DNA from: Macrostomum lignano
Taxonomy: Eukaryota
Length of the DNA: 64,000 nucleotides
Reading direction: 5' to 3'
Assembly (NCBI GenBank): GCA_002269645.1
Contig: NIVC01000143.1
Coordinates: 558,001 to 622,000, forward strand
The notes under the pieces were generated by a model. The model made no database searches. It saw nothing but the letters and a program-made list of their open reading frames with translations, and was not told the origin of the DNA. This document shows, piece by piece, positions 8,947-61,822 of the stretch (positions are counted from its first letter, which is position 1; each line of letters opens with the position of its first letter). Both the position numbers and the translations under genes were made by a program.

Positions 8947-9945
8947 ATGTCCAGCCTCCTACATCTCGCTGTTCTGTGCGCCTTTGACTGTGTGAACGGA
9001 GACAGAACTGCACAGCACAGAGTAGTCAACAACGACTGCCTGAACTTGTCGCTATCGGTGTGGCAAATGCCGCGACCCTCCGCCTCCCTGCTCAACTGTT
9101 TCATGTCGAGTCGGTCGTTCCGTCTCGGCAGCGTCGGCGTGGTGCAGCGGAACAAGCGAAACGCCTCGTGCGCGCTGTTCCGCTTCGGTGAGGTGTGCCG
9201 CCTGCTCAACTTGACCTCGATCAACTCGTCTACAACGACTGAGAGAGTGGCCGCTGAAAGCACCTGCGACACCGTGGTGGACTCGGAGTACGACGCGATC
9301 GCTGCGAACGAGCACTTCAGTGCTGTGTGGGTCGGAGACAGGGGACTGGCGCTGGAGAACCTGGTGTGCGGCTCCGAGGGACAGAGGAACCCCAGGAAGT
9401 CGCTCAATGTGACCTGGACGAGTGAGGGCGCTCGCATGGACGGAGTCTCGTCTCGGCTGTGGGTGGACGACCCCACAGGTCTGGACTTCACGGAGACCTA
9501 CACCTGGGTGCTGCACCTGAAGAGAACTCCAGGTGAAGTTGTCTTTCTGGAGCTGAGCAGCTGCATCGGATCCGGCAACATGCTCGACCACCTGCAGGAG
9601 TACTCATCGATGGTAGGAGTGAGTCACGCCCTCTACCTAAACCCGGGTTTCTTCGCCAGATTCCAGACCGGCTCGGTGCTGCCTGCGGACCCGAACGAGT
9701 TCTTCATCGCTGGCGTCTCATTCAGAAGGCAGCAGAACCTGACTCGCTTCTTCTATGGAGCAAAGTTTCTACCGACTGCCGGCGTCTTTGATCAGACGAA
9801 AAGCTTCAACCAAGCCGGAGCCTGCATCCATGTGGGCTTTCGGTACAACAACAAGTACATGCTTCAAGGTGTGGTCAGAGCCGTGGCCGTTTCTAATACG
9901 AATCTGCCAGAGGAAGCCATTAATAAAGTTTTCTTCGGAGTTTGA
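8947..9945 (+). CDS. Single-exon secreted protein: signal peptide, PAN/Apple-like Cys domain, LamG/ConA-like C-terminal domain (332 aa)
   Basis: Long ORF 8878..9945 with coding-like codon usage. Second Met gives MSSLLHLAVLCAFDCVNG (hydrophobic leader). The beta-rich C-terminus ends LQGVVRAVAVSNTNLPEEAINKVF, a LamG-like ending. Domain calls are by motif resemblance. Confidence 0.75.
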   Translation: MSSLLHLAVLCAFDCVNGDRTAQHRVVNNDCLNLSLSVWQMPRPSASLLNCFMSSRSFRLGSVGVVQRNKRNASCALFRFGEVCRLLNLTSINSSTTTERVAAESTCDTVVDSEYDAIAANEHFSAVWVGDRGLALENLVCGSEGQRNPRKSLNVTWTSEGARMDGVSSRLWVDDPTGLDFTETYTWVLHLKRTPGEVVFLELSSCIGSGNMLDHLQEYSSMVGVSHALYLNPGFFARFQTGSVLPADPNEFFIAGVSFRRQQNLTRFFYGAKFLPTAGVFDQTKSFNQAGACIHVGFRYNNKYMLQGVVRAVAVSNTNLPEEAINKVFFGV

Positions 9946-13346: not shown

Positions 13347-14960
13347 CAGGAATGGGCAGACTTTTACCTCAAAGGCCAGAAAAGAATCCAGCTTATGGCT
13401 GAGGGGCAGTTGAGAGGCGAGAGAAGAAGGAATAGACTATTCGAAAAGAGAGGAGAGGTAATAAGGAGAGAAAAGACAATAGGAGAGATGAGGGAGTGAG
13501 GACGATGAGAGGAGAGAGTAGACAGTAGAGTAGCGAGTGGAGAGGAGAGAGTAGAGGAGCGAGTAGAGGAGAGAGTAGAGGAGCGAGTAGAGGAGCGAGT
13601 AGAGGAGAGAGTAGAGTAGCGAGTGGAGAGGAGAGAGCAGAGAGCTGCAGATGAGAGGAGAGCAGAGAGAAGAGCAGAGAGGAGTTAGTAAAGAGGAAAA
13701 AGGAGAGATGAGAAATGAGAGATGAGAGATAAAGGAGGAGAGTGGAGAGAGAAGAGACGAGACAAGAGAGGGAGAGAGTATATAGAAGAGGGAAGAGAAG
13801 AGGAGAAAGGAGAAAGGAAGGTGAGGAGACAAACAAGGTGAAAGAAAAGAGTACAGAGGACAGAATGAGAGAACATATAAGACAGTAAAGATGACAGATG
13901 AAAGAGGGGGGATGAGCTGAGAGCAGAGACGAAAATGAACAGACGAGAGATAAGAGAGAAGAGATTACAGAGACGAAAGGAGAGACAAAAGGGAGAGAGA
14001 AGTGAGTGAGGCGAGAGGAGAGAAAAGAGGAGAATGGAGGGGAGAGAGTAGAGAGGAAAAGAAAGCATTTATAAGCATCTGGGGAAGCAGAGAGAGAGGG
14101 GGAAGCAGAGAGAGGGGGAAGCAGAGAGAGAGGGGGAAGCAGAGACAGGGGGGAGCAGAGAGAGAGGGGGAAGCAGAGAGAGAGGGGGGAAGCAGAGAGA
14201 GAGGGGGGAAGCAGAGAGAGGGGGAAGCAGAGAGAGGGGGGAGCAGAGAGAGAGGGGGAAGCAGAGAGAGAGAGAGGGGGAAGCAGAGAGAGAGAGGGGA
14301 GCAGAGAGAGAGGGGGGGAAGCAGAGAGAGAGGGGGGAAGCAGAGAGAGAGGGGGAAGCAGAGAGAGAGGGGGGAAGCAGAGAGAGAGGGGGAAGCAGAG
14401 AGAGAGGGGGAAGCAGAGAGAGAGGGGGAAGCAGAGAGAGAGGGGGAAGCAGAGAGAGAGGGGGAAGCAGAGAGAGAGGGGGAAGCAGAGAGAGAGGGAG
14501 GAAGCAGAGAAATGAAAAGAGATAAAGGAGAAGAGAGAGAAGAGAAATGAGAGATCAGAGAGCAAATAAAGACGAGAGAGAAGAGAGGTGAAGGAAAAGA
14601 CGAGAGAAGAGTGGGAGGAGAGGAAAGAGAAAAGAAGAGAAAAGAAGATAAAAGAGATGAGATAAGAGAGATGAAAAAGAAGAGAAATGAGGGAAGATAC
14701 GAGAGAAGAGAATAGAGATGAGGGAAGATACGAGAGAAGAGAAGAGAGATGAGGGAAGATACGAGAGAAGAGAAGAGAGATGAGGGAAGATACGAGAGAA
14801 GAGAGGAGAGGAGAGAGAGCAGAGAGGAGAGGAGAGAGAGCAGAGAGGAGAGACGAGGGACGAGAGAGAAGAGAGGAAACAGAAGAGAAGATAGAAATTT
14901 CAAAGGATCCAAGGGACGTAGTGAGAGTCAGAGGCAGAGGCCAGAGTTTGCCAATACATG
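13347..14960 (+). mobile_element. Non-autonomous hAT-like element with a long GA-rich interior
   Basis: Left end CAGGAATGGGCAGACTTTTACCTCAAAGGCCAGA and right end GGCCAGAGTTTGCCAATACATG resemble the ends of the 60147-60825 element. The interior includes a 17-19-bp GGGGGAAGCAGAGAGAG array (14083-14500). The TSD is not cleanly preserved. Confidence 0.6.
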
Positions 14961-15360
14961 TTTTAGAGTCAGACAGACATTAACTGCCTATTTAAAGTAA
15001 AAGCACCCCAGCCAACAATATCAATGTTTGCCTCAAATCCTAATTTCACGCGAATGTACTCCATTTTGTTTACCTCTATCCTACTAACTATAACAAGTTT
15101 TTGTTTCAGTATAAGCTCAGATTTCAGAATACATGCAAAAATAGTTCCGGGGATTGGAATTCCCCGGGTTCAAATTCCGCGGGTTTCAACAGCTTGTTAA
15201 ATATATATAAAACCAAATAAATTTAAGTTGTAGAATCCTCTTTGACCAAGTTTGGTTATAAATGCTATTAAAACCGTACAATACATGTATGTGAATATAT
15301 TTAACTCGCATTTTTAAGCGACTTGGGCTTGATTGACAAGTCATTATTTAACCAAGCAAC

Positions 15361-16929: not shown

Positions 16930-17168
16930 CAACCGACATAGCCATATCTGAAGGCAGCGTACGGCTGTTTAGTCCAAGGTCTGGGGGTCACTACACACAC
17001 TAAATTACCCCAGCTAATGCTGGCACCCATTTTACAGCTGAGTGAACTGAAGCAATGCAGAGTTAAGTGTCTTGCTCAAGGACACTAGTTGTTTCGGTGA
17101 GGTCGAGAATCGAACCCCCGACATTCAAGTCGTAAGTCCGACGCTCTAACCACTAGGCTACAACCCCC
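16930..17168 (-). mobile_element. tRNA-derived CORE-type SINE, copy 1
   Basis: Minus-strand head has A box (TAGCCTAGTGGTT) and B box (GGTTCGATTC), followed by GTGTCCTTGAGCAAGACACTTAAC...CTGTAAAATGGG, which resembles the MIR/CORE domain. Confidence 0.8.
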
Positions 17169-18029
17169 CTTATTCTTTTAATGCTACTGAAAGTAGAAAT
17201 AAGAAAATAAGAAAATATAAACAACAAAAAGTTAACGAAACACAATGAAACAGAATTTTATATTTACATAACATACAAGTATAACGTATACAATATAACG
17301 GATTCTAAGAAATTTTATTACAAACATAAGAGCCATAGTTAACTGATAGTTACAATTACAACAACATATTATGCTTCTTTTTAACGAATCATAAAATTCC
17401 AAGAAATCAACTTTAAATCAATAAGGGTCTGTAACCACCGAGAAGGCAAGCAGTCGGAGGCCTATGAGACGCCAAAGGTCAATTGGAATTTGTTGGTAGG
17501 CCATCAAAGGGAGAATTAGTGTTTACATTTAAGCCATGGCTAGTAGGGAGGCTTTAAGGCCTGATGCTTTTTCGCATTAATCAGCTTTTTTCGGTCCAAT
17601 TCGGTCCATCCGGTGTTGAGAATGCGGAGAACCTTATCTGTGAACGTCCGCTACCTATAAATAAGGGCTACCGGGCGAGCGACCATCTAACCTCTTGGAT
17701 AGTCATTGCGGGACACCCCAGGACCAGACGTGTCTTGTTAATGAAGATTTACGCAACTATAAGCTAGTCTTCAATTAAGAATATAATAAAAAGAAATCCG
17801 AAAATCAACATTTGGTTTTTTTCGACGCGTTTCGCACACCAAGGTGCATCGTCAGGTATATTGTTTGAAACGAAAGGTGTGAGTAAGCGAATTTACCTGA
17901 TTTAAGGGTATAAATTTCAATGATAAAAAACTGAATCAAAGACAGTATAGTAGTGACAGACTGCTTCAAGTTTAGGTCAATTTCGTAGCCATGTAACTAG
18001 TAATTAAAACTTTGTTGATCTTCCACAAT

Positions 18030-18270
18030 AAAGGTAAAGTTATGATCCAATACCACGACTGAAAGGTCGGGGCTACGATTCTCGACCCACTAGGAACAAT
18101 AATTTGTGTCCTTGAGCAAGACACTCAACTCATGCATTTCTCCAGTTCACCCTGCTGTAAAATGGGGTAATTATGGGTGTGTGGCGACCTACCAGTCCTT
18201 GGACTGAATAGCCGTACGCAGCCTTCAGTTGCAAATTAGGACAGATTTAATAATAAATTATTATTATTAT
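18030..18270 (+). mobile_element. tRNA-derived CORE-type SINE, copy 2 (decayed head)
   Basis: Same core (GTGTCCTTGAGCAAGACACTCAAC...CTGTAAAATGGG) and tail (CCTTGGACTGAATAGCCGTACGC) as copy 1, in opposite orientation, with a (TTA)-rich end. Confidence 0.78.
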
Positions 18271-18312
18271 CATTATTTAAATGAACCTAAACTTGAAGAA
18301 TTCATTTAGCTA

Positions 18313-18834
18313 CTACTGATTAGCAGCAAACTGAGTAGTAGTATTGCTAGCAAGATCATGCTCAGAGGCAGCCTGACTCAGGGGAGCCAGCTCGCCCACA
18401 GTGGCCACAGATGCAGCATAGTGCTCAGGATAAGCTCTCTCAGTCAGCCGTTTGATATTATTAATCCTTTTAAACACCAGCTCAAGATCTTTCCGCAACT
18501 CGTCCAGAGTCTGCTGGTGCTGCCGGAACTCCCCACTCAGCTGGCGAAATCGTCCCAGCGAGAGTTCATTGAAATTTGACAGCATATGATTGGCCCGCTC
18601 GAATCTCTCAAGCATCTCAGTCTGAGACACTGTGATCACGTGCAGGGAGGGCCGGTCAATCATGGATAGAAATGAGCCAGTGAGAGCTTCCGGTCTCTGG
18701 GGATTCACTAATGTCTGCCGGCGCAGCTGCTGCTGTCTCTGCTGAGGAGACATCTGACCATCGCTGTCATCAGCTGCTGCTGCTGCTGCTGCTGTGGCAC
18801 CATCATGGCTGCTGCTGCCGGAGTTCGATGTCAT
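18313..18834 (-). CDS. KXD1: KxDL motif-containing protein 1 (BORC subunit), single coding exon, 173 aa
   Basis: Q..MLERFERANHML.NFNELS..R...RKDLELVFKRI..IK....AYP matches the KxDL family signature. An acceptor-like CACTTCAG lies 5 nt before the ATG. Confidence 0.9.
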   Translation of the reverse strand: MTSNSGSSSHDGATAAAAAAADDSDGQMSPQQRQQQLRRQTLVNPQRPEALTGSFLSMIDRPSLHVITVSQTEMLERFERANHMLSNFNELSLGRFRQLSGEFRQHQQTLDELRKDLELVFKRINNIKRLTERAYPEHYAASVATVGELAPLSQAASEHDLASNTTTQFAANQ

Positions 18835-18890
18835 TCAGTCTGAAGTGGATGTTGCACTGCAGTGATACCTAGTTCAACCGTACACCTGAG

Positions 18891-18923
<33 letters not shown>

Positions 18924-19327
18924 GCCTGTCTGTCTGTCTGTCTGTCTGTCCCTATTTCTATAGTATACATTCTATTGAATTCCTTCAATTTCTTCAGTAC
19001 ATATTTATTCACTATACACCAAAATAGGATGTTGTGTACTGGAAGTGCCTGCCCTAGCGTGTATATACAAGTATGTCTTGCCTAAATCTTTAAAAGAAAA
19101 TAGCTAACATAAATTCGTTACTATCAGAATGACGGAAGTAACACGGCTACTTCTAAAGATTAAGTAAAAATATTCAGAACCGAATTTTTTATTTAAAACA
19201 CTAAGATTTTTCAAACAGACACAAATGACTTGTAGAAGTTATAAAATTTAATTCAACGGTTGAAAAGCGGGACATTGCAGCCCATGTAGCTCTGGGATAT
19301 GGTAGAATTTTGTGCTTTGCAGATTGA

Positions 19328-21135
19328 GGCAGGGAGAGAAGCAGGGAGAGAGGCAGGGAGAGAGGCAGGGAGAGAGGCAGGGAGAGGCAAGGAGAGAGAC
19401 AGGGAGAGAGGCAGAGAGAGGTAGGGGGAGAATCAGAGAGAGGCAGGGAGAGAGGCAGGGAGAGAAGGGAGAGAGGCAGGGAGAGGCAGGGAGAGAGGCA
19501 GGGAGAGAAGGGAGAGAGGCAGGGAGAGAAGCAGAGAGAGGCAGGGAGAGAGGCAGGGAGAGAGGCAGAGAGAGAGGCAGGGAGAGAGGCAGGGAGAGAG
19601 GCAGGGAGAGAGGCAGGGAGAGAGGCAGGGAGAGAGGCAGGGAGAGAGGCAGGGAGAGAAGGGAGAGAGGCAGAGAGAGGCAGGGAGAGAGGCAGGGAGA
19701 GAGGCAGGGAGAGAGGCAGGGAGAGAAAGGAGAGAGGCAGAGAGAGACAGGGAGAGAGGCAGGGAGAGAGGCAGGGAGAGAGGCAGGGAGAGAGGCAGGG
19801 AGAGAGGCAGGGAGAGAGGCAGGGAGAGAGGCAGGGAGAGAGGCAGGGAGAGAGGCAGGGAGAGAAGCAGGGAGAGAGGCAGGGAGAGAGGCAGGGAGAG
19901 AGGCAGGGAGAGGCAAGGAGAGAGACAGGGAGAGAGGCAGAGAGAGGTAGGGGGAGAATCAGAGAAAGGCAGGGAGAGAGGCAGGGAGAGAGGCAGGGAG
20001 AGAAGGGAGAGAGGCAGGGAGAGGCAGGGAGAGAGGCAGGGAGAGAGGCAGGGAGAGAAGGGAGAGAGGCAGGGAGAGAAGCAGAGAGAGGCAGGGAGAG
20101 AGGCAGGGAGAGAGGCAGAGAGAGAGGCAGGGAGAGAGGCAGGGAGAGAGGCAGGGAGAGAGACAGGGAGAGAGGCAGGGAGAGAGGCAGGGAGAGAGAC
20201 AGGGAGAGAGGCAGGGAGAGAGGCAGGGAAAGAGGCAGGGAGAGAGGCAGGGAGAGAGGCAGGGAGAGAGGCAGAGAGAGAGGCAGGGAGAGAAGGGAGA
20301 GAGGCAGAGAGAGGCAGGGAGAGAGGCAGGGAGAGAGGCAGGGAGAGAGGCAGGGAGAGAGGCAGGGAGAGAAAGGAGAGAGGCAGAGAGAGACAGGGAG
20401 AGAGGCAGGGAGAGAGGCAGGGAGAGAGGCAGGGAGAGAGGCAGGGAGAGAGGCAGGGAGAGAGGCAGAGAGAGGCAGGGAGAGAGGCAGGGAGAGAGGC
20501 AGGGAGAGAGGCAGGGAGAGAGGCAGGGAGAGAGGCAGGGAGAGAGGCAGGGAGAGAAGCAGGGAGAGAGGCAGGGAGAGAGACAGGGAGAGAGGCAGGG
20601 AGAGAGGCAGGGAGAGAGGCAGGGAGAGAAAGGAGAGAGGCAGAGAGAGACAGGGAGAGAGGCAGGGAGAGAGGCAGGGAGAGAGGCAGGGAGAGAGGCA
20701 GGGAGAGAGTCAGGGAGAGAGGCAGGGAGAGAGGCAGGGAGAGAAGGGAGAGAGACAGGGAGAGAGGCAGGGAGAGAGGCAGGGAGAGAGGCAGGGAGAG
20801 AGGCAGGGAGAGAGGCAGGGAGAGAAGGGAGAGAGGCAGGGAGAGAGGCAGGGAGAGAGGCAGGGAGAGAGACAGGGAGAGAGACAGGGAGAGAGGCAGG
20901 GAGAGAGGCAGGGAGAGGCAGGGAGAGGCAGGGAGAGAGGCAGGGGGAGAAGGGAGAGAGGCAGGGAGAGAGGCAGGGAGAGAAGGGAGAGGCAGGGAGA
21001 GAGGCAGGGAGAGAGGCAGGGAGAGATGCAGGGAGAGAGGCAGGGAGAGAGACAGGGAGAGAGGCAGGGAGAGAGACAGGGAGAGAGGCAGGGAGAGAGG
21101 CAGGGAGAGAGGCAGGAAGAGAAGGGAGAGAGGCA
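19328..21135. repeat. 12-bp minisatellite (GCAGGGAGAGAG)n, ~1.8 kb
   Basis: Tandem units between ATPSCKMT and KXD1. Source of false ORFs 19248..21334. Confidence 0.97.
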
Positions 21136-21182
21136 ACTCAAAAAACAGCAGCAAAATAACAAGTAGGATGCAGCATCCGGCA

Positions 21183-22925
21183 TCAACTCCAAGCTCTCGC
21201 AGCACCGTTAGTCCTGGCAGCAGCAGCAGCAGCCGCAGGTGGCCGGTACAGCCACACGGAGTCCACCCCGTCAATAATCTGGTCGACATGTCTCCAGTCG
21301 GGCAGTCGGTACCGACAAGCCACCACGCAGGCATCTGGATGCAACTCAGCCGCCAGCTTGGCTTGCAAGGGTTTCATTAAAGACTTCACCCCGAATATCA
21401 CCACAACATCGTATGTGGACAGCGAGTGGCGGAGCAGGTCGGTTCGTAGGAATTTCGGACGATGAATGCAGTTGAGACGGGAACAGGTGAGGCGACTGTA
21501 CAGCACCAGGGGCCAGTTGAGCTCGACACCAGTGGCTTGGTACAGGCGGAGTGCCGCTTCGCGTACAATGCGACCGTCTCCGGAGCCAAGGTCTATCTGG
21601 TGTGAGGGAGTTAAGCGGTTCTTCATGGTGTGACTCTTCATGGTTTGATTCTTCATGGTGTGATTCTTTATGGGTTGATTCTTCATGGTGTGATTCTTCA
21701 TGGTGTAATTCTTCATGGTGTGATTCTTCATGGTGTGATTCTTCATGGTGTGATTCTTCATGGTGTAATTCTTCATGGTGTGATTCTTCATGGTGTGATT
21801 CTTCATGGTGTGATTCTTCATGGTGTGATTCTTCATGGTGTGATTCTTCATGGTGTGATTCTTCATGGTGTGACTTCTCATGGTGTGATTCTTCATGATG
21901 TGATTCTTCATGGTGTGATTCTTCATAGTGTGACTCTTCATGATCTGATTCTTCATGATGTGATTCTTCATAGTGTGACTCTTCATGATGTGATTCTTCA
22001 TGGTGTGACTCTTCATGGTGTGATTCTTCATGGTGTGATTCTTTATTGTGTGATTCTTCATGGTGTGATTCTTCATGGTGTGATTCTTCATGATGTGATT
22101 CTTCATGGTGTGATTCTTCATAGTGTGACTCTTCATGGTGTGATTCTTCATGGTGTGATTCTTCATGTTGTGATTCTTCATGATGTGATTCTTCATGATG
22201 TGATTCTTCCTGATGTGATTCTTCATGATGTGATTCTTCCTGATGTGATTCTTCCTGATGTGATTCTTCATGGTGTGATTCTTCATGATGTGATTCTTCA
22301 TGGTGTGATTCTTCATGGTGTGATTCTTCATGATGTGATTCTTCATGGTGTGATTCTTCATGGTGTGATTCTTCATGTTGTGATTCTTCATGGTGTGATT
22401 CTTCCTGATGTTATTCTTTAAGTTGTGATTCTTCCTGATGTTATTCTTTATGGTGTGACTCTTCAAGGTATGATTATTTATGGTGTCACTCTTCATGGCG
22501 CGATTTTTTATGATGTGATTCTAACAGTGATTTGAGAAGATAGAAAAACATTTAAAAAAGTTTTTTTAAAGTGATATTTCAATGAGTGTAGACGGCCGCT
22601 CACTAACCAGTCTCACTGGCATGCTGGGCACCTTAGTAATTCTGTTATTCTTCTTGAGCAAGCTGAATACATTGGCCACCTGGCTGTCGGTGGCCGGTAC
22701 AAACGGCAGCGCGTGGCGCCTCAGCGCCGGCGTCAGAAAGGGCGCCGCCGCGAACACCATGCCTAGGGCGCCGGCCGCGCAAGCGGCGCCAACCGCCAGA
22801 CGGCGCAGGGGAGATGCGACTGCGGTCGGAGCTGACGGTGAAGATGATGAAGCGCCTGGGAGGCTGTAAATTGCAGCCTCATCACTGATGGCGCAGTTGG
22901 ATTCCGAGTCTGGCTGGAGTATCAT
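21183..22925 (-). CDS. ATPSCKMT: ATP synthase c-subunit lysine N-methyltransferase (FAM173B-like), 2 exons
   Basis: Exon 1 22925-22608 (donor GTTAGT; alternative donor after 22632) and exon 2 21596-21183. Motifs [44 protein letters not shown] and GVDSVWLY. Confidence 0.9.
21622..22520. repeat. 15-bp minisatellite (GTGTGATTCTTCATG) filling the ATPSCKMT intron
   Basis: Tandem units that produce the KNHTM-repeat false extension of ORF 21183..22496. Confidence 0.97.
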
Positions 22926-23049
22926 TTTTTGGCGAATGCTTTATGATTTCTGCTTTTGCAATCACTTTTCCAGGGGGTTATAAGGTCTTCAGGGTCATAG
23001 GATACATCTTAGGGTAAAAAATTGTTTACGTTCATGGAATGTTCTTTAG

Positions 23050-23530
23050 GGTCATGGGGTATTATGTAGACTCATAATGGAATATTCTTCATGGTCATTG
23101 GATATTTTTTGGCGTCTTGGGATACACTTTAAGGTCATGGGATATTCTTTATGGTCATTGGATATTCTTTGGCGTTTTGGGATATTCTTTAGGGTCATGG
23201 GATATTCTTTGGGGTCTTGAGATATTCTTTAGGGTCATAGGATATTCTTTGGGGTCTTGGGATATTCTTTAGGGTCATTAACTATCCTTAAGGGTCATGG
23301 GATATTATTTAGGGTAATGAGATGTTCTTTAGGGTCATGGGATATTCTTTGGGGTCTTGGGATATTCTTTGGGGTCATGGGATATTCTTTAGGGTCATGG
23401 GATATTCTTTGGGGTCATGGAATATTCTTTGGGGTCATGGGATATTCTTTAGGGTCATGGGATATTCTTTAGGTCCTAGGATATTCCTGGGATATTTTAG
23501 GATATTCTTTAGGTCCTAGGATATTTTTAA
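23050..23530. repeat. 20-bp minisatellite (GGTCATGGGATATTCTTTAG)
   Basis: Tandem units in the intergenic spacer. Confidence 0.93.
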
Positions 23531-23718
23531 GGTTCATGGGATCATACGACGTACTAACGGTTATACAACACTTTTGGGGTCATACTATACGATAGCCACT
23601 ATCATTATCACAAACTCGTAAATCTTTCAGCAAGACTATTGGCTATAATACCAACTATTTTCAAATAATATATTTGTAAACTTTTCAACTAGACTATGAG
23701 CTCACACAATGCACAAAC

Positions 23719-24519
23719 TCATTGCGACAGACTTCTAAAAGCAGCAACACAGGCAGATAAATCAACACCAACAGTGTTAGAAGCAGAAGTTCTTCGTTTC
23801 TTAGAGTCGGCAGCAGCGGCACTGCAGCTCAAGGCAGCAGACAAATCGAAAGCAACTCTCAAGCACAATTCTCCAACAGTTTCTGCGCTGGCAGGAGGCA
23901 CTCTCTTAAAAACATTAAAAGTTAAACAGTGATAAGCCAGTAGGCCAGCCTTTTGGTTGCCATGGTGACACAGGACAGTCAGTTGATTAGATTTTTCGTT
24001 GCTATCCGCTTCAAATGCCTTAGCAACGAAGTTGGCGGCTTCAATCAGCTGATTCCTAGTCAGACTGCCGCCAGGCAGTGCAGGGCAGCAGGCTACTGCA
24101 GTTTGGTCCAGTCTCAAAGTGGCCTCACATCGACCAGCCAAGGTCAAAGCGGTGCTTGACAAATTTCTCAACTGATTGACAATTGACAGACACCTGGAGT
24201 GAGATCGAATCAGCCTGCTGATCTCAGCCTCATCCGGTGATTCTAAATTATTCGATAAAGACTCGTTTGAACTCGAACTGGACGATGAAGAATAAGATTC
24301 ATGATCACTATCAGCTTCACTTGTGCTTTTATTCTCATCATCAGCTTTGGACAGAGCTAGTTTTAAATCTTGTCTCAGCTGACGAGTAGAAGAGTGCAGT
24401 CTGACGCTTGTGGCGCGGTAGTCCAGCGCCAAGTCTACAAGTTGACGCGAATGACGCTGCCACAGTTGTGACACTTCGGGATCCTTGCGCGAAGATAAGG
24501 GATTAGGGAATAAGTGTAG
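23719..24519 (-). CDS. Met-less 266-codon open frame, possibly CINP-like (CDK2-interacting protein)
   Basis: Open from directly after TTTTTAG (24519) to TGA at 23719 with no ATG codon. Coiled-coil-like helices flank an S/E-rich linker. PAL...T...E...K....L.H.G....LL.Y recalls the CINP C-terminus. Family assignment is tentative. Confidence 0.7.
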   Translation of the reverse strand, partial: LHLFPNPLSSRKDPEVSQLWQRHSRQLVDLALDYRATSVRLHSSTRQLRQDLKLALSKADDENKSTSEADSDHESYSSSSSSSSNESLSNNLESPDEAEISRLIRSHSRCLSIVNQLRNLSSTALTLAGRCEATLRLDQTAVACCPALPGGSLTRNQLIEAANFVAKAFEADSNEKSNQLTVLCHHGNQKAGLLAYHCLTFNVFKRVPPASAETVGELCLRVAFDLSAALSCSAAAADSKKRRTSASNTVGVDLSACVAAFRSLSQ

Positions 24520-24549
24520 CTAAAAATCATCTTGTCATGGCTATCTAGA

Positions 24550-25152
24550 TTATCCTGAACTGATCCTTAGAGTCCCCAGTCTACTCAGAACTGATCCTTG
24601 GAGTCCCCAGTCTACTCAGAACTGATCGTTGGAGTCCCCAGTCTACTCAGAACTGATCGTTGGAGTCCCCAGTCTACTCAGAACTGAATCTTATAGTCCC
24701 CAATCTACTCAAAACTGATCCTTGGAGTCCCCAGACTACTTAGAACTGATCCTCAGAGTCCTCAGTCTACTCAGAACTGATCCTGAGAGTCCCCAGTCTA
24801 CTCAGAACTGATCCTCAGAGTCCCCAGACTACTTAGAACTGATCCTCAGAGTCCCCAGACTACTTAGAACTGATCCTCAGAGTCCCCAGACTACTTAGAA
24901 CTGATTCTTAGAGTCCCCAGACTACTTAGAACTGATTCTTAGAGTCCCCAGTCTACTCAGAACTGATTCTTAGAGTCCTCAGTCTACTCAGAACTGATTC
25001 TTAGAGTTCCCAGTCTACTCAGAACTGATTCTTAGAGTTCCCAGTCTACTCAGAACTGATTCTTAGAGTTCCCAGTCTACTCAGAACTGATTCTTAGAGT
25101 TCCCAGTCTACTCAGAACTGATCCTTAGCGTCCACAGTCTACTCAGAACTGA
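24550..25152. repeat. 31-bp minisatellite (GAGTCCCCAGTCTACTCAGAACTGATCCTTA)
   Basis: Tandem units between the TPRKB stop and the Met-less ORF. Confidence 0.95.
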
Positions 25153-25337
25153 TATATTACTTAGAAAATCAATTACTTTACAAAAAACCAAGCAAAAAAA
25201 ACATTTCAAAGAAGCAATAAAGACCTAATTTCACGTTAACAACAATTTACTTTGACACAATAATTGAACAAATAAAAACTTGCAATTAGGCTACTGATAG
25301 TAATATAAACAAGAGAGCAACAATTAAAATTGCAGTC

Positions 25338-26810
25338 CTACACGGTAACCACATCTTTGCAAGCGACTCTGGTTACAAAACAGTAACTGAGAGAATCTCC
25401 AGATTCCTTTGACAGGGCCTGCTCCTCCGGTGTGACTTTGTACAGTTCAAATAGTTCGACAAGATCGCACTCGGGATTCGTGTCGGGCCACAGTGAATGG
25501 CTAGATTCGCAATCTAGTTGACTGGTCAATTTGGATTCTAATCCGTCTAGGCTAGCGGACGATTTATCAGCTGATTGGGGATGAAACAGCACAGCAACTA
25601 CACTGGCAGTGCTGGAGTTCATACCGAACTTGGCTAAAGATTGACTGATATTTTTTGTTGGCGATAGACAGTACAGCAGTTCCGTGTGAATTGATTTAGT
25701 TGCCATGCGAGACTCCGATTGATGAGCCAAAGCTTGATTGGCGGCTGTGAGCAGGTGCAAGCTGTCGTACACCTGAGATCAATGACAAATTTATGTCATT
25801 TAGAAGGCCGCTAATACCCTATGGGTTATTTATTCATAAAAGGTCGCTAATACCCCTACAGGTCATTTAGAAGACCGCTAATACCCCATGGGTCATTTAG
25901 AAGGTCGCTAATACCGTTTTGGGTCACTTAGAAGGTCAAAAGATACCCCCAGGGGTCATTTAGAAGGTCGCTAATACCCCAGGGGTCATTTAGAAGATCG
26001 CTAATACCCCAGGGGTCATTTAGAAGGTCGCTAATACCCCCAGGGGTCATTTATTGAATAGAAGGTCGCTAATACCCCCAGGGGTCATTTAGAAGGTCGC
26101 TAATACCCCAGGGGTCATTTAGAAGGTCGCTAATACCCCCAGGGGTCATTTAGAAGGTCGCTAATACCCCAGGGGTCATTTAGAAGGTCGCTAATACCCC
26201 CAGGGGTCATTTAGAAGGTCGCTAATACCCCCAGGGGTCATTTAGAAGGTCGCTAATACCCCAGGGGTCATTTAGAAGGTCGCTAATACCCCCAGGGGTC
26301 ATTTAGAAGGTCGCTAATACCCCATGTGGTCATTAAGAAGGTCGCTAATACCATATTTGGGTCATTTAGAAGGTCGCTAATACCCGATAGGTCATTAAGA
26401 AGGTCGCTAATACCCTTGTGGGTCACTTAGAAGGTCAATAATACTCCTACGGGTCATTTAGGTCGCTAATACCCCCAGGGGTCATTTAGAAGGTCGCTAA
26501 TACCCCCAGGGGTCATTTGGAAGGTCACTAATACCCCAGGGGTCATTTACAAGGTCACTAATACCCCATGGGCCATTTAGAAGGCTGCTAATACCCTTGA
26601 CTTCTTCAGAATCTCACTAATACAAGCACAGTTGCTGCAAAAGCTCACTAATTTAGTTGACACCAAAGCTCCAGCAAGGTGACCTTGGATAGCAGCAGTG
26701 TGCACCTCTGCAGGATTTTTCAATCCTTGAAACAGGCGCATTGAAATAGTCACATTAGGTACCGACATACTTGGATAGCGCATCCAACCAGTGCTTGAAG
26801 TTGTCATCAT
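25338..26810 (-). CDS. TPRKB: KEOPS complex subunit CGI-121/TPRKB, 2 exons, 198 aa
   Basis: Exon 1 26810-26649 (donor GTGAGC) and exon 2 25772-25338, phase 0. Motifs LFQGLKN, HLLTAANQAL, M.TKSIHTELLYCLSPTKNISQSLAKFG and TRVACKDV. Confidence 0.92.
25790..26600. repeat. ~29-30-bp minisatellite (GGGTCATTTAGAAGGTCGCTAATACCCCAG) in the TPRKB intron
   Basis: Tandem units fill almost the whole intron. Confidence 0.95.
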
Positions 26811-28919
26811 AGTAGCAGAATGTGTTTTTTTATATAATTTTTTTAGAATTAGGTCTAAAAATAATAATAAACCAAGAATGTCAAAAATATGAATATTGAA
26901 TTAATAATTATACTATTTCATGACAAAAATCACTAGATAGAGATAATTTGACAATGACCAAATTTTTATCAAAAGTTAAAATGCAAATGTTAAACACTAA
27001 AACAATAAATATTAAGCATGATCAAAGTTATTTGACAATCTCATAAAATTTATCTTAGATTAAAACTTCCAAATTGAATCAACCAAATACTTGCTTTAAA
27101 ATGGAATAGGAAAGTTGACAATTGTCAATTGAAATACCAATTAGTCATTTTAATGTGACACAAAGATTTGGAACAAGTTGAGAGTTGAGTATGAATGTTG
27201 TAGCTTATAAATGAATAACAATAGTAATTAACTATAAAACCATTTAATGCATACTGCACTTTGCACTATAATAGTACTTGAATTTTGTTTATTTAGTTTA
27301 CCTTACATACAAATTAGATAAACCAAAATATTTCAATTAGTTTTACTTAAATCAAATTTAAAAAATTATTTAGAAACAAATAGTAAATAGCAATCTCTAC
27401 TAAATATTGACAAAATGCCTTATCTGCTATTGTGTAACATTTGGAAATTAATATTTGTAGTGAAGCTGAATACTAGTTATAAAAATTCAATATGCATATA
27501 TATAATATATAAAATATATATGTAGACTCTGCATATGATTATGATTCTATAAATTTAGACATTGCTTCTGTAGTGTTGCAAGAATTGGGGGTTGCTTGGA
27601 TTTGGGTCTAGAGATCTTGGAATTGCACTGCTATTACCAGTGTAATGGTTTACTCTTTGGCTTTTGAGGTGGGATAGACTGCTGTTGTCCGGGTTAACCC
27701 TAGCAAACACTTTTATAGGGGCTGAGACTGGGGAGAATTCTAAAATCAAGGGAGTGCTGCCACCAGCATGGGGACTATAGGATTGGCAATGAAGGGGTCT
27801 GATTAGGTTCCATGCAAATAAATAATGCTAGAACAACTGAAGGAGTCTCAGAGATTTCAATGTCCAAATGATAGGACTCAATGGTAGCAAATGGCCTAAG
27901 CGGCGCAGTCCTAGCACTGTCAAATGTCCATGCTTGAGCATGTCTGAGTTTAGCTCTCAGAGGACTCCTAACTCCTACAAACCTAATAACTATGTCTTGC
28001 ACAGATGGGCAGCAAGGAATAAATCTATGCACCTATAGCAGCAACAGACTCACAACTAACTAAGTCTAATAGCTATTTCTTAGAATTATGCACATGTGCT
28101 ACAACTGCAAAATCACCATCACTCTTATTATTCATGCCTATATCGCAAATAGGCAATCAGCAGAATGGCTTCAGCCAACTGATTTCCTGCCAATAAGGTA
28201 GGCTGGGAAATCAGAGCTATAGCACTAGCAATGCTCTACCAAGACCTGTTCAGGAGCATGCTTTCTGCTTGAGCACTGCAATGCTCTACCAAGACCTGCT
28301 CAGGAGCTTGCGTCTGCTTCTAGTGATGCTTTGCTCTACCAAGACCTGCTCAGGAGCTTTGCTTCGCTGTTAACTGGCGCTAGAGCACTAGACTTGGAGA
28401 AGGCTCTTGACAAGTCTTCACGAGGTGGTTCTTAGGAGAAAATCAGACAACGGTCTACATGCATTGATATAGAATGTAGAGGGTAGAGCGTTTGAGCATT
28501 CCATGGCTTGACTATGGATTGGCAGCCTGAAGAGTGTGGATAATTATACATAACAAATATTGATTAAACATAGGGGGAGAGTAGCCGACAGTTGCCTCAA
28601 GCCATTAGTGAAAGTAGCATGCCAAAATTGGGCTTATGCGCACAAGGCTGCATAAAGGGAGGGTTAAGCTTAGGACACAGGGTCCATGAAACCCTTAGTA
28701 TAAAAGAATGACACATGGGAAGAGGCTTAGATGGCAAAGGAATGAGAGAGCAGAAGGGGAGAAAGTCCAGCGAGTACACAAGGAGAGGAATGCAGCTAAC
28801 TAGATTTGTGTACACTGAGCAATTGTATGTGGTAAGCTAGGCAACAACAGTACATGCAAGCGCCAAATTTGGTAGCTTCGACTAACTAACCCTAGGCTAG
28901 AAAGCTTCCTAGTTTCCTA

Positions 28920-31103
28920 TAGAGGTCAGACGAGCAAAATTTTGGGCTTCTTCAAGTTTATGTTGATAAAATACTTCCAATTTTCCGATTTTTCTGAAAT
29001 TTTCACCAGACACTTGGTGGATACCCAAAATGATAAAAAAGCAAAATAATCACCAAAAAACCACATTCTGTGGTGATGCGACCTCAGTTTATTAATTGAC
29101 CATAGTGTCAATGAGAATTCAACAAAAATTGTTTCAATGAAATTTGTATTTAAAAATAAACATTTTTCAAAAAATGTTAACTTGCTTTGAGAATATAAAA
29201 TTAAAAAAATTATAACTAATATTAATAATTTTCCAATTATAACGTATAGTGAATATAAATTAATACAAAATTTGATATTGAGTTTTGCTATAATGTCAAA
29301 TAATTGCCTTATCACGGTTTCCTCTTTTTTAAATTTGCCACATCTACCATGCACATTATTGTCTCCCACATTCTAAATTGTTGCTACCTTTGCCATTGTG
29401 GTCAACAGTAATACCTCTTGCCAAATGATTTAGTAATGTAAGTAATTAATTATATTATAAATGTCTGTAATATTCAAGTTTGCGTTGATAAAATCAACCT
29501 CCATGAAGAATCCCCTACCCAAAAATCCCTTATCCCATTCCATGCCCTAATAGTTGGTCATTGACCTTTTTTGTAAGGATTGATCCCTTTTTCCCTAAGT
29601 TTGGAATTTATCAACACCTTCTTGAATAGGTCTCCATGCCTCTATTCAAGTTTATGTTGATAAAATCAACCCCCATGAAGAATCCCTTATCTTAAAAACC
29701 CCCATCCCATTCCTCATGCTCCAGTGTTTGGTCATTGACCTTTTGGTAGGGTCTACCCCTCCACTGAGTCTGGAATTTATCAACATCATCTTGAATAGGT
29801 CTCCATGCCTCTATTCAAGTTTATGTTAATAAAATCAATCCCCATGAAGAATTTCCCCACCCTAAAACCCCCCATTCTCCATGTCCCGATGGTTGGTTTT
29901 AAGTGCCTACATATAGTTGGGTTGAAAGTACCAAAAAATGAAGCTCAAATTTGAAATCAGCACCATCAAAAACTCCTATAGAGACAAAATTATGCTCCTA
30001 TTAAAATTGCAACTAATTTATCAACACCCTATTGGAATAAGTTGACAAAACGCGGACAACTGTCTGTCGCATTTTCGGATTCTCCTGGTGTTGCGTCGCG
30101 TGACAGTGGTGTCAAGTGGTGTGTCGCGTCGCACGACACTGGAAACCTGGTGTTGTCATGCGTCGCGTCGCAGCCTGGACCTGTAGCCAAAACCTTGCAA
30201 ACTGTGTTTCATTGTAATATGTTCACGGTTGTTTCTCGGTATTTAAATGTTTCAAACATGTTTGATAATAACTGGTTCTTGAATTGTTCTTTTTTATTTT
30301 GACAGTAAAGTAACTAATACTTCAAATATAATTTTTAGAAATGTTACTTGTTAGTTACAATGCATGCACTGTTTTTCTAAGTGTTGTACCTTTGTTGTTT
30401 TACTGTTTATTGTTTTTAAATTTCTTTTCTTTTTCCACAAAATTGAAAGGAATACTCTCGTCCCTCGCCCCATGGTCTCCGCATCGAGAGTGAACGGCAG
30501 AATGGGAATGGTCAATTGCAACGTGGCTGCTGTGGCGCCCCATCCCCCAGTCATTCGGTCAACAGACACCGGTGTTGCGTCGCGCGTCGCCGCCCCCCAG
30601 TCAACAAAATTTGGTGTCGCGTTGTACTTTTGAGGGCACAATTTTGGCACCCGTGTCGCGCGTCTGCGGGTTTTTGAAACTTATTCCAATAGGGTATAAA
30701 TATAAACTTGAAGAAGTTCAAAATTTTGGTTGGGTATGAAATTTCATGAAATTTTCAAAGTCAGGCATGATCGTGATCATGAATTTATATTTGCATACAT
30801 GTATTTAGAGCTCATAAGTTACAAGTGTTGAAAATAACAAAACAAGAAAAGAAATATTTATAAATTGATAATAGCTACTTGGTAATGCTGTCAAGTCAAC
30901 AAATTTAAAATTTATTACTCTTTTACACAATTGTGTTCACATATTTTGGTAAATCAAGTAGAAAAGTTATACTTCTAATAAAAATGTAATAAAGCAGAAA
31001 TTTAAGACTTTCGTGAACAGGTTTCAAGGAAATCACGATCATGAAAAAAATGGTCATGAATTCACAAAATTGTGATCACGATTGTGATCACGTCCAACCC
31101 CTA
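28920..31103. mobile_element. Non-autonomous hAT-like DNA transposon (~2.2 kb)
   Basis: Perfect 8-bp TSD GTTTCCTA at 28912-28919 and 31104-31111. Imperfect TIRs TAGAGGTCAGACG / CGTCCAACCCCTA. Subterminal GATCACG/TCATGA repeats and three ~170-bp internal units (29474-29880). Confidence 0.8.
30026..30695. mobile_element. MITE nested in the hAT element
   Basis: Perfect 18-bp TIR ACCCTATTGGAATAAGTT / AACTTATTCCAATAGGGT, with GTCGCG-rich subterminal repeats at both ends. Confidence 0.75.
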
Positions 31104-60825: not shown

Positions 60826-61822
60826 TTTTAGTATTTAGCCCTTTTACTTTGGCATCTCTGATCGAAATTCCGAGTCCGCCGCAATCCCAAAGACTTAAAC
60901 CGCTTCTGGCGCTGCAACTAAAAGCACTAAAATGCCGTCAGATACATGTAAAAGAATAAAGAGTCAGCGCCAAGAGGAACTGAAGGAGGCAGCCAAGAGA
61001 TCCAGAAAATTACTGGTCTTGCCCTGGCAATTTTCATGCATTAATTTGAGATATTTACTAAATACATGTAAATTGATAGTGCAGTAGTGCAGTGCGCAAT
61101 GTTTGAATTTGTTGAAAATTCGAATATTTTTCACACTGGCCACTTTCAACACAGATTGAATATTGGCCTGGTTGTCACAATTAATGTCGCAAACTGACAT
61201 AACAGCAGTAGTTAGGGTTGCCCTTAGATTAAAAAAATCATGTTCAATGTGCCCTTCCACCAAAAGCCCCCCCCCACTTTAAATATGTTCCGACACCACT
61301 GGCAGCACAAGTAATTAACTGCGTGCAACTGAGTTTACATGTAGTACAATTATTAAGGAAGGGAAGAACTCTCGCAGGAAAACCTCGCTGCAGGAAAATC
61401 TCGGCGGGGAAATCGCAGTGGAAAATCTCCAGTGGGAATAAAACCCGCCGCTGCGGGAAAACCTCCTGCGGGAAAACCTCGCTGCGGGATAAACTCCCGC
61501 GAGAAAAACTTCTGCGGGGCCTCGCTGCGGAAAAGCTCGCGGGGGAAAACTGCGAGAAAACCTCGCTGTTGGAAGAGGAAAACTTTCTGTAGGCAATTCT
61601 TGTGTTCTCGGATAGACTAACAACTCAGATTAATTTGCAATTATTCCGACTCAAAAAGACGGATTAACGGAAATTAGATTACCACATACTAACAGCATTT
61701 ATAATAAAGTGTATTTATCTGCCAAATAAAGACAATTTTGTTTCAAATGCAGAAAGAAAAGTTTAAGAATTTCTTTTACTCTAGGGCACAAAACGGGCAC
61801 ATGTTTAACTTTTTCGAAATGA

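What the first reader, a model, noticed from the sequence alone, without database searches (positions are those of the whole stretch)
23719..24522. ATG-less 266-codon ORF positioned to receive its start codon from a spliced leader
Seen in sequence: this minus-strand frame has no ATG over 266 codons. It opens exactly after TTTTTAG (24519, phase 0), and a second AG (CGCAAG|GAT at 24484) is also phase 0. Upstream lie only a minisatellite and the U-rich 3' flank of TPRKB, where I found no candidate coding exon. Established knowledge: flatworm spliced leaders end in AUG, and in Schistosoma this AUG can act as the initiator Met. Inference: trans-splicing supplies the initiator, giving M-LHLFPNP... 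or M-DPEVSQLW.... The alternative is cis-splicing from TPRKB exon 1 (also phase 0), which would give a chimeric TPRKB-exon1 fusion isoform and would be unusual too.
Basis: partly seen in the sequence, partly recalled or inferred. Interest (0 to 1): 0.85.

Follow-up and report, generated by a model that had tools for sequence, protein, structure and literature searches.

The report
Gene whose start codon comes from the spliced leader
This is a real, selectively conserved flatworm (Macrostomum lignano) gene with no ATG of its own, sitting second in an operon, which almost certainly gets its start codon from the AUG at the end of the trans-spliced leader: a neat but already known flatworm mechanism.

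Summary
The minus-strand frame 23722-24519 is open for 266 codons with no ATG. The window is Macrostomum lignano (Mlig_3_7, contig NIVC01000143.1), whose 35-nt spliced leader ends in ATG.

GenBank annotates this ORF as a 5'-partial 254-aa hypothetical protein starting at DPEV, directly after the second AG (AAG|GAT, 24484|24483). In a paralogous locus it is "g2" of a multi-gene transcriptional unit: TPRKB = g1, a methyltransferase-like gene = g3, and KxDL further downstream.

Two paralogous copies carry an in-frame TAA inside the 12 codons between TTTTTAG and AAG|GAT. Its "phase 0" is also automatic, because that TAG is the stop that bounds the frame.

The 254 codons are under purifying selection (11 synonymous and 6 non-synonymous changes, dN/dS about 0.17, p = 4e-4; one in-frame 9-nt indel). 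A modelled SL+exon mRNA has the SL AUG as its first AUG, opening 255 codons. Every other AUG opens 32 codons or fewer.

Best reading: SL trans-splicing at 24484|24483 supplies the initiator Met (M-DPEVSQLW...). I saw no SL-containing reads or translation data. The protein has no detectable relatives outside M. lignano. The mechanism is known from Cheng et al. 2006, so this is a new example, not a new kind.

The parts
23722..24483 (-). Conserved coding exon of gene 'g2': 254 sense codons (DPEVSQLW...SLSQ) with no ATG. With the SL AUG it would give a 255-aa protein.
   Evidence: Translation. Identical to GenBank-derived protein P0003, 254 aa. dN/dS about 0.17 among three paralogs. Modelled SL+exon mRNA.
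23719..23721 (-). Stop codon TGA of g2
24484..24485 (-). AG of the proposed SL trans-splice acceptor (CGCAAG|GAT); the first exon base is 24483
   Evidence: Phase 0, with 74% pyrimidines in the 19 nt upstream. The annotated 5'-partial CDS starts here in L001 and in L003 (= the window).
24486..24519 (-). End of the outron / 3' splice-site region: CTAAT branch-point-like motif and a C/T-rich tract. Open in this copy, but not conserved as coding.
   Evidence: The paralogs L001 and L002 have an in-frame TAA here (LHLFPNP*SSRK). Pyrimidine content.
24520..24522 (-). In-frame TAG that bounds the open frame.
24557..25153 (.). 31-bp x 19.3 minisatellite filling most of the TPRKB-g2 intercistronic spacer
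   Evidence: The spacer length differs between paralogs: 977, 763 and 854 nt (from the coordinates).
25154..25337 (-). T-rich 3' flank of TPRKB. It has no canonical AATAAA on this strand.
25338..25772 (-). TPRKB/CGI-121 exon 2 with its stop codon (gene g1 of the unit)
   Evidence: Pfam PF08617, E = 3.5e-24. Gene model rebuilt and found by exact match in the database as BOX15_Mlig025748g1.
26649..26810 (-). TPRKB exon 1 (ATG at 26810, 162 nt, phase 0, donor GTGAGC). A TATATAAAAAAA motif lies about 25 nt upstream of the annotated 5' end.
23021..23542 (.). 20-bp x 26 minisatellite in the spacer between g2 and the next gene (methyltransferase-like, ATG at 22925)

Best explanation
The ORF is the second gene of a polycistronic transcriptional unit of Macrostomum lignano: TATA-type promoter, then TPRKB, then this gene, then a methyltransferase-like gene, then KxDL, all on the minus strand. 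The pre-mRNA is resolved by spliced-leader trans-splicing. The 35-nt SL is joined to the acceptor CGCAAG|GAT (24484|24483). The SL's 3'-terminal AUG then lies directly in frame with GAT CCC GAA..., is the first AUG of the mature mRNA, and serves as the initiator. The product is a 255-aa protein, M-DPEVSQLWQRH...SLSQ, with no other methionine. The 36 nt between TTTTTAG and AAG are outron (branch-point-like motif, pyrimidine tract), not coding.

Shown: the organism, the SL sequence, the frame relations, the lack of any genomic ATG, the purifying selection, the operon-type context and the annotated 5' end.

Inferred: that SL reads map exactly to this AG, and that ribosomes start at the SL AUG.

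The protein has a predicted long N-terminal helix, an acidic and Ser-rich linker and a low-confidence alpha/beta C-terminal half. It has no detectable relatives, so its cellular role is unknown.
For: - Organism: the only protein hit belongs to M. lignano, and the window encodes P0003 exactly on NIVC01000143.1.
- SL: it ends in ATG (PMC8629364). PMC10468722 also notes the SL probably carries the start codon. Use of the SL AUG as initiator in flatworms is cited to Cheng et al. 2006 in PMC12582326, PMC5832876 and PMC7653826.
- One transcriptional unit: in paralog locus L001, TPRKB, this ORF and the methyltransferase-like gene are Mlig008015g1, g2 and g3. TPRKB of the window's contig is Mlig025748g1, and the KxDL cluster carries the name Mlig025748g5. 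The annotation pipeline cuts units at SL and poly(A) signals.
- Annotated start: the deposited proteins are '5' partial' and begin at D of AAG|GAT in two of three copies. In L001 an in-frame TAA lies 5 codons upstream. A 5'-partial call starting at D therefore requires an mRNA 5' end within 0-2 nt of the AG. This rests on my inference that ORFs were called TransDecoder-style.
- Upstream acceptor: the paralogs have TAA between the two AGs.
- Selection: 11 synonymous and 6 non-synonymous changes, dN/dS 0.17, p = 4e-4, plus one in-frame 9-nt indel.
- Modelled mRNA: the SL AUG opens 255 codons and every other AUG opens 32 or fewer.
- Spacing: TPRKB stop to acceptor is 854 nt, of which 597 are minisatellite. 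The repeat-adjusted 257 nt is under the 1-kb operon criterion of PMC8629364.
- No cis exon: there is no in-frame ATG...|GT mini-exon with a consensus donor between TPRKB and the acceptor.
Against:
- The acceptor is AAG, not the most enriched YTNCAG motif. That motif is found at only about 44% of SL sites.
- In the third copy (L002) the annotated protein starts 6 nt downstream of the AG, at GAA. The neighbouring g3 in L001 starts 3 nt after an AG. Annotated 5' ends are therefore not always exactly at acceptors.
- 5'-partial calls are common in this annotation: 5 of the 12 genes seen.
- No canonical AATAAA follows TPRKB or g2.
- No orthologs were found, so conservation of the ATG-less state beyond recent paralogs is untested.
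Confidence: 0.77

Rival explanations
1. Trans-splicing uses the upstream TTTTTAG acceptor (first exon base 24519), giving M-LHLFPNPLSSRK-DPEV... (267 aa).
For: The frame is open from 24519 in this copy, and T5-AG looks like a canonical acceptor. It could be a minor alternative site in this copy.
Against: Both paralogs carry an in-frame TAA in these 12 codons. Annotated proteins never include them. The phase match is automatic because the TAG is the bounding stop. Only 47% pyrimidines lie upstream, against 74% for the downstream site.
Confidence: 0.06
2. The ORF is expressed as a chimeric protein by cis-splicing from the TPRKB exon 1 donor (26649|26648, phase 0) to the 24483 acceptor, skipping TPRKB exon 2. 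The start codon would be the TPRKB ATG.
For: Exon 1 is phase 0. Its GTGAGC donor is the only consensus in-frame donor within about 3 kb upstream. Sharing of acceptors between cis- and trans-splicing is reported in parasitic flatworms (PMC12582326).
Against: The transcript-based annotation separates g1 and g2 and leaves g2 5'-partial in all three copies. The exon 1 donor is needed for the conserved CGI-121 domain. There is no positive evidence for such a junction.
Confidence: 0.08
3. The ORF is not translated. It would be a non-coding stretch of the polycistronic transcript, or a pseudogene that lost its first exon.
For: No ATG. No homolog outside M. lignano in 5.8 billion and 1.84 billion-protein searches. 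No Pfam, PDB or fold match. The AlphaFold model is weak, pLDDT 52.7.
Against: The frame is intact in three paralogs, the only indel is in frame, and synonymous changes are significantly in excess (dN/dS 0.17, p = 4e-4). The ORF is in unique sequence, and its length was reached in 1 of 200 shuffles.
Confidence: 0.06
4. Translation starts at a genomic near-cognate codon (for example GTG at 24474) on an mRNA that is not trans-spliced.
For: A GTG lies 3 codons into the ORF.
Against: An internal gene of a polycistronic unit has no cap without SL addition. Once the SL is added, its AUG precedes the GTG in frame. Near-cognate initiation is rare (general knowledge).
Confidence: 0.03

Closest known systems
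Flatworm mRNAs that use the SL 3'-terminal AUG as initiator methionine (Cheng, Cohen, Ndegwa & Davis 2006, J Biol Chem 281:733, Schistosoma mansoni); called 'slORFs' in PMC9851317
   Same: The SL ends in AUG, the acceptor places that AUG in frame with the ORF, and the SL supplies the start codon.
   Different: This is a free-living macrostomid, not a parasitic flatworm. The recipient ORF has no Met codon at all, so dependence on the SL would be obligate. The gene is a lineage-restricted orphan inside an operon. Translation from the SL AUG has not been demonstrated for this gene.
SL-resolved operons of M. lignano (Wudarski et al. 2017, PMC5730564; Ustyantsev & Berezikov 2021, PMC8629364)
   Same: Same-strand genes share one transcriptional unit, the repeat-adjusted spacer is under 1 kb, the first gene has its own promoter, and the spacers are repeat-rich.
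   Different: Those papers do not discuss genes that lack a genomic start codon. I found no mention of this particular unit in the searchable literature.
C. elegans and Oikopleura slORFs initiated at near-cognate codons in the SL (PMC9851317)
   Same: The ORF is created or extended by the leader sequence.
   Different: Here the codon is a canonical AUG at the very 3' end of the SL, and the ORF is the main and only long ORF of the mRNA.

Membership tests
SL-AUG-initiated flatworm mRNA (slORF sensu Cheng 2006) | The organism performs SL trans-splicing with a leader ending in AUG | tested here: met
   The window is M. lignano NIVC01000143.1. The SL CGGTCTCTTACTGCGAAGACTCAATTTATTGCATG is given in PMC8629364.
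SL-AUG-initiated flatworm mRNA (slORF sensu Cheng 2006) | The acceptor AG places the SL AUG in frame with the ORF, with no intervening stop | tested here: met
   AAG|GAT is phase 0. The modelled mRNA gives a 255-aa ORF from the SL AUG. This holds in all three paralogs.
SL-AUG-initiated flatworm mRNA (slORF sensu Cheng 2006) | No usable genomic AUG for the same ORF | tested here: met
   There are 0 ATG in 266 codons. The other AUGs of the mRNA open 32 codons or fewer. No in-frame upstream mini-exon with a consensus donor was found.
SL-AUG-initiated flatworm mRNA (slORF sensu Cheng 2006) | SL-containing transcripts joined at this acceptor | tested here: inconclusive
   The evidence is only indirect. 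The transcript-based annotation puts the 5'-partial CDS start at the AG in 2 of 3 copies and names the gene g2 of a unit cut at SL and poly(A) signals. In the third copy the start is 6 nt off. No reads were available.
SL-AUG-initiated flatworm mRNA (slORF sensu Cheng 2006) | Translation actually starts at the SL AUG | not testable with these tools
   This needs Ribo-seq, N-terminal proteomics or a reporter.
Downstream gene of an M. lignano operon (criteria of PMC8629364) | Adjacent same-strand genes, a repeat-adjusted distance under 1 kb, and a trans-spliced downstream gene | tested here: met
   TPRKB stop 25338 to acceptor 24484 is 854 nt, less 597 nt of minisatellite, leaving 257 nt. In paralog L001 the genes share the unit prefix as g1, g2 and g3. 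Trans-splicing of g2 itself is inferred.
Any known protein family (for the product) | Significant sequence or fold similarity | tested here: not met
   Best Pfam E = 0.061, below cutoff. Best PDB sequence hit E = 0.11. Foldseek found no hit at E <= 0.001, on a low-confidence model. The exhaustive phmmer search found only the gene's own M. lignano cluster (P0001) and a tandem-repeat artefact, P0004.

The most novel reading that the evidence does not exclude
The gene is a young, lineage-restricted (possibly de novo) coding gene that arose inside an operon spacer. It could become translatable without ever evolving its own promoter, cap site or start codon, because SL trans-splicing at a chance AG supplies all three. 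That would make SL-AUG donation a facilitator of gene birth in flatworms. A second unexcluded reading is a dual-use acceptor that also yields a TPRKB-exon-1 fusion isoform.
Probability: 0.15. Interest if true: 0.6.

Novelty: new member of a known kind. Interest (0 to 1): 0.3.

Why it matters
The gene shows concretely why ATG-requiring gene finders miss or truncate genes in flatworms and other organisms with spliced leaders. GenBank lists it only as 'partial', and the protein cluster holds no UniRef entry for it.

A Met-free ORF that depends entirely on the leader's AUG is a clean natural test case. Blocking trans-splicing, or mutating one AG, should abolish the protein. M. lignano is transgenic-tractable, so SL-AUG initiation could be tested in vivo in a free-living flatworm.

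It does not change what is known about the mechanism.

Tried and rejected
- **Homology.** The word-indexed search of 5.8 billion proteins found only the M. lignano cluster. The exhaustive phmmer search of 1.84 billion representatives added only P0004, a 1030-aa translated tandem repeat. Its score is inflated by 15 repeated stretches of about 30 bits each, and I rejected it as a homolog.
- **Families and structure.** Pfam, PDB sequence search, a single-sequence AlphaFold model (pLDDT 52.7) and Foldseek against PDB (no hit at E <= 0.001) gave no functional lead.
- **Literature on the gene.** A full-text search for the gene names Mlig008015, Mlig025748 and Mlig014127 found nothing. The supplements of PMC5816591 and PMC5730564 hold no occurrence. 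No supplement is held as text for PMC8629364.
- **SL RNA gene in the window.** I found only a 2-mismatch chance match at 61035-61050; 8 of 100 shuffles did as well.
- **Poly(A) signals.** There is no canonical AATAAA on the minus strand after TPRKB or after g2. The only one nearby is inside the ORF, at 24328-24333, so 3' ends could not be placed.
- **Upstream cis exons.** Enumerating ATG...|GT phase-0 exons found none with a GTRAG donor except TPRKB exon 1.
- **TPRKB exon 1 in L002.** I checked whether it is missing there, which would have excluded the fusion rival. It is present at 98% identity, so the check does not discriminate.
- **Orthologs.** Orthologs in other Macrostomum species could not be looked for with the collections at hand.

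Full report
**1. The observation**

On the minus strand, TAG (24522-24520) is followed by 266 sense codons, LHLFPNPLSSRKDPEVSQLW...AAFRSLSQ, and then TGA (23721-23719). None of the 266 codons is ATG.

The phase of the first one carries no information, because that TAG is the stop codon that bounds the frame.

Upstream lie a 31-bp x 19.3 minisatellite (24557-25153) and the T-rich 3' flank of a CGI-121/TPRKB gene (Pfam PF08617, E = 3.5e-24; sequence). TPRKB exon 1 is 26810-26649, 162 nt, phase 0, with donor GTGAGC. Its intron is 26648-25773 and ends TCTCAG.

ORF length alone is only moderately improbable. 1 of 200 shuffles of the window reached 254 or more open codons. The window also contains many longer ATG-less open frames, and most of those I checked overlap tandem-repeat arrays. 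This ORF is in unique sequence.

**2. Where the window comes from**

The only protein match in 5.8 billion sequences is a cluster of three Macrostomum lignano proteins. One of them, P0003 (254 aa), is identical to the window ORF from DPEV onward. It is encoded on GenBank contig NIVC01000143.1 of assembly GCA_002269645.1 (Mlig_3_7). The fetched locus L003 maps exactly to window 17719-30483.

The other two members are paralogous copies on other contigs: P0001 = BOX15_Mlig008015g2 (locus L001) and P0002 = BOX15_Mlig014127g2 (locus L002). Both are labelled 'partial'. M. lignano is described as a hidden polyploid (abstract of PMC10468722), which fits three copies about 98% identical.

**3. The spliced leader**

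M. lignano has one 35-nt SL, CGGTCTCTTACTGCGAAGACTCAATTTATTGCATG, ending in ATG. [quoted passage not shown] The most enriched motif at SL acceptors is YTNCAG, present at 9,551 of 21,754 sites (PMC8629364).

[quoted passage not shown] That the flatworm SL 3'-terminal AUG can act as initiator Met is attributed to Cheng et al. 2006 by several papers.

**4. Operon context**

By exact-sequence look-up, the neighbours in paralog locus L001 are Mlig008015g1 (TPRKB), g2 (this ORF) and g3 (a methyltransferase-like gene). They have consecutive accessions PAA66900 to PAA66902, followed by KxDL (PAA66903).

TPRKB of the window's own contig is Mlig025748g1, and the KxDL cluster carries the name Mlig025748g5. 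The window ORF's own gene name is withheld by the tool. I therefore infer its place in the Mlig025748 unit from gene order and from the paralog.

In the Mlig_3_7 annotation, a shared prefix with .g1.g2 and so on denotes genes cut out of one assembled transcriptional unit by the TBONE pipeline, using SL-read peaks and poly(A) sites (PMC5730564).

The distance from the TPRKB stop to the AAG acceptor is 854 nt, of which 597 nt are minisatellite. The remaining 257 nt is below the 1-kb repeat-adjusted operon threshold of PMC8629364. The same paper notes that repeats inflate intercistronic spacers, which is what is seen here.

A TATATAAAAAAA motif sits about 25 nt upstream of the annotated TPRKB 5' end. 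This fits a promoter in front of a first gene that is not trans-spliced.

**5. Which acceptor**

Three lines of evidence point to AAG|GAT (24484|24483).

(a) In L001 and L002 the 12 codons between the two AGs contain an in-frame TAA (LHLFPNP*SSRK; TTA in the window, TAA in both paralogs). An SL joined at the upstream site would terminate after 8 codons in those copies.

(b) The deposited 5'-partial proteins begin at D of GAT in L001 and in L003 (the window). In L001 a stop lies 5 codons upstream. An ORF reported as open to the transcript's 5' end and starting at D therefore implies an mRNA 5' end within 0-2 nt of the AG. This is my inference from how TransDecoder-type 5'-partial ORFs are called.

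(c) The 36 nt in between look like a 3' splice region. They hold a CTAAT branch-point-like motif and 74% pyrimidines in the 19 nt before the AG, against 47% before TTTTTAG.

There are caveats. In L002 the annotated protein starts 6 nt further downstream (EVSQ...). The neighbouring g3 in L001 starts 3 nt after a CTCCAG. Annotated ends are therefore not always exactly on acceptors. AAG is also not the preferred CAG.

**6. Is it a real coding gene?**

Among the three copies, the 254 codons differ at 17 sites. 11 are synonymous (all at third positions) and 6 are non-synonymous, over 183 synonymous and 579 non-synonymous sites. This gives dN/dS of about 0.17, and the probability of 11 or more synonymous changes under neutrality is 4.3e-4. 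The only indel is 9 nt, in frame, in a poly-Ser run.

None of the copies has an ATG in the frame. Purifying selection on the protein has therefore acted since the copies diverged, without a genomic start codon.

**7. The mature mRNA**

Joining the SL to 24483 gives ...TTGCATG|GATCCCGAAGTG.... The SL AUG (mRNA positions 33-35) is the first AUG and opens 255 codons. Every other AUG in the transcript opens 32 codons or fewer. No ATG-started ORF of 60 aa or more exists on this strand in the region.

Between TPRKB and the acceptor there is no ATG-containing phase-0 mini-exon with a consensus GTRAG donor. The only such donor within about 3 kb upstream is that of TPRKB exon 1.

**8. The product**

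No family could be assigned:
- Pfam: best E = 0.061, below cutoff.
- PDB sequences: best E = 0.11.
- Exhaustive phmmer over 1.84 billion representatives: only the gene's own M. lignano cluster, plus a translated tandem repeat whose score comes from 15 weak repeated stretches.
- Single-sequence AlphaFold model: weak (pLDDT 52.7). It shows a long N-terminal helix (residues 2-55), a disordered acidic and Ser-rich linker, a second helix and a low-confidence alpha/beta C-terminal half.
- Foldseek against PDB: nothing at E <= 0.001.

In the data available here, the gene is an orphan restricted to M. lignano.

**9. Verdict**

Its main inference, that the SL supplies the initiator, is well supported by indirect evidence, in the M-DPEVSQLW... 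version only. The M-LHLFPNP... version is contradicted by the paralogs. A TPRKB-exon-1 fusion remains a low-probability minor isoform.

The mechanism is established for flatworms, so this is a new, clean example and not a new phenomenon. The remaining novelty is that dependence on the SL AUG appears obligate (a Met-free ORF) in an orphan gene embedded in an operon. That invites the untested idea that SL-AUG donation eases the birth of new genes. Direct proof needs SL-junction reads and an N-terminal peptide or a reporter.

Noticed in passing
window 19326-26596: Every intron or intercistronic spacer of this transcriptional unit carries its own, unrelated minisatellite. They are: 31/61-bp x 24 in the TPRKB intron (25795-26596); 31-bp x 19 between TPRKB and g2 (24557-25153); 20-bp x 26 between g2 and g3 (23021-23542); 15-bp x 60 in the g3 intron (21619-22522); and 12-bp x 157 before KxDL (19326-21135). 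Copy numbers differ between paralogs.
   Followed up: partly
window 22905-22930, minus strand (g3 start): The methyltransferase-like gene has a genomic ATG (22925, MILQPDSES...). A CTCCAG|CCA site matching the published SL-acceptor motif YTNCAG lies 4 codons later and is in frame with the SL AUG. The paralog is annotated 5'-partial from D. The SL AUG may replace the genomic start here too, giving M-PDSES....
   Followed up: partly
window 21183-22496, minus strand: A 437-aa ATG-started ORF reads through the 15-bp minisatellite as (M/I)KNHT pentapeptide repeats and into the methyltransferase C-terminal exon. In the paralog L001 this stretch is annotated as an intron. The repeat keeps an open frame, which could mislead gene finders.
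   Followed up: partly
window 19201-21183, minus strand (L003 9301-11283): GenBank annotates a 477-aa protein here, over the region of the 12-bp repeat (19326-21135). The 412-aa counterpart in paralog L002 translates largely as SLPA/LSPC-type repeats. This is probably an ORF-calling artefact in a repeat, counted as a gene of the unit.
   Followed up: no
window 26811-26850, minus strand: A TATATAAAAAAA motif lies about 25 nt upstream of the annotated TPRKB 5' end, and that 5' end is only about 3 nt before the ATG. This suggests a TATA promoter with an extremely short 5' UTR for the first gene of the unit.
   Followed up: no
window 17098-17167, minus strand: There is a marginal Rfam tRNA hit (30.9 bits against a gathering score of 29) that ARAGORN does not call. 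It may be a tRNA-derived element or a pseudogene.
   Followed up: partly
L003 11610-11660 (window about 18830-18875, minus strand): Upstream of KxDL there is a CTTCAG|ACTGAATG acceptor-like site. If it is used, the SL AUG would open a 4-codon uORF (ATG ACT GAA TGA) overlapping the real ATG out of frame. In paralog L002 this CAG is mutated to CTG, and the annotated protein starts 3 codons later.
   Followed up: no
window 13396-14979, minus strand: This is a 528-codon ATG-less open frame, the longest ATG-less open frame in the window. It overlaps an 18-bp repeat array (14081-14510) only in part. I did not examine it.
   Followed up: no
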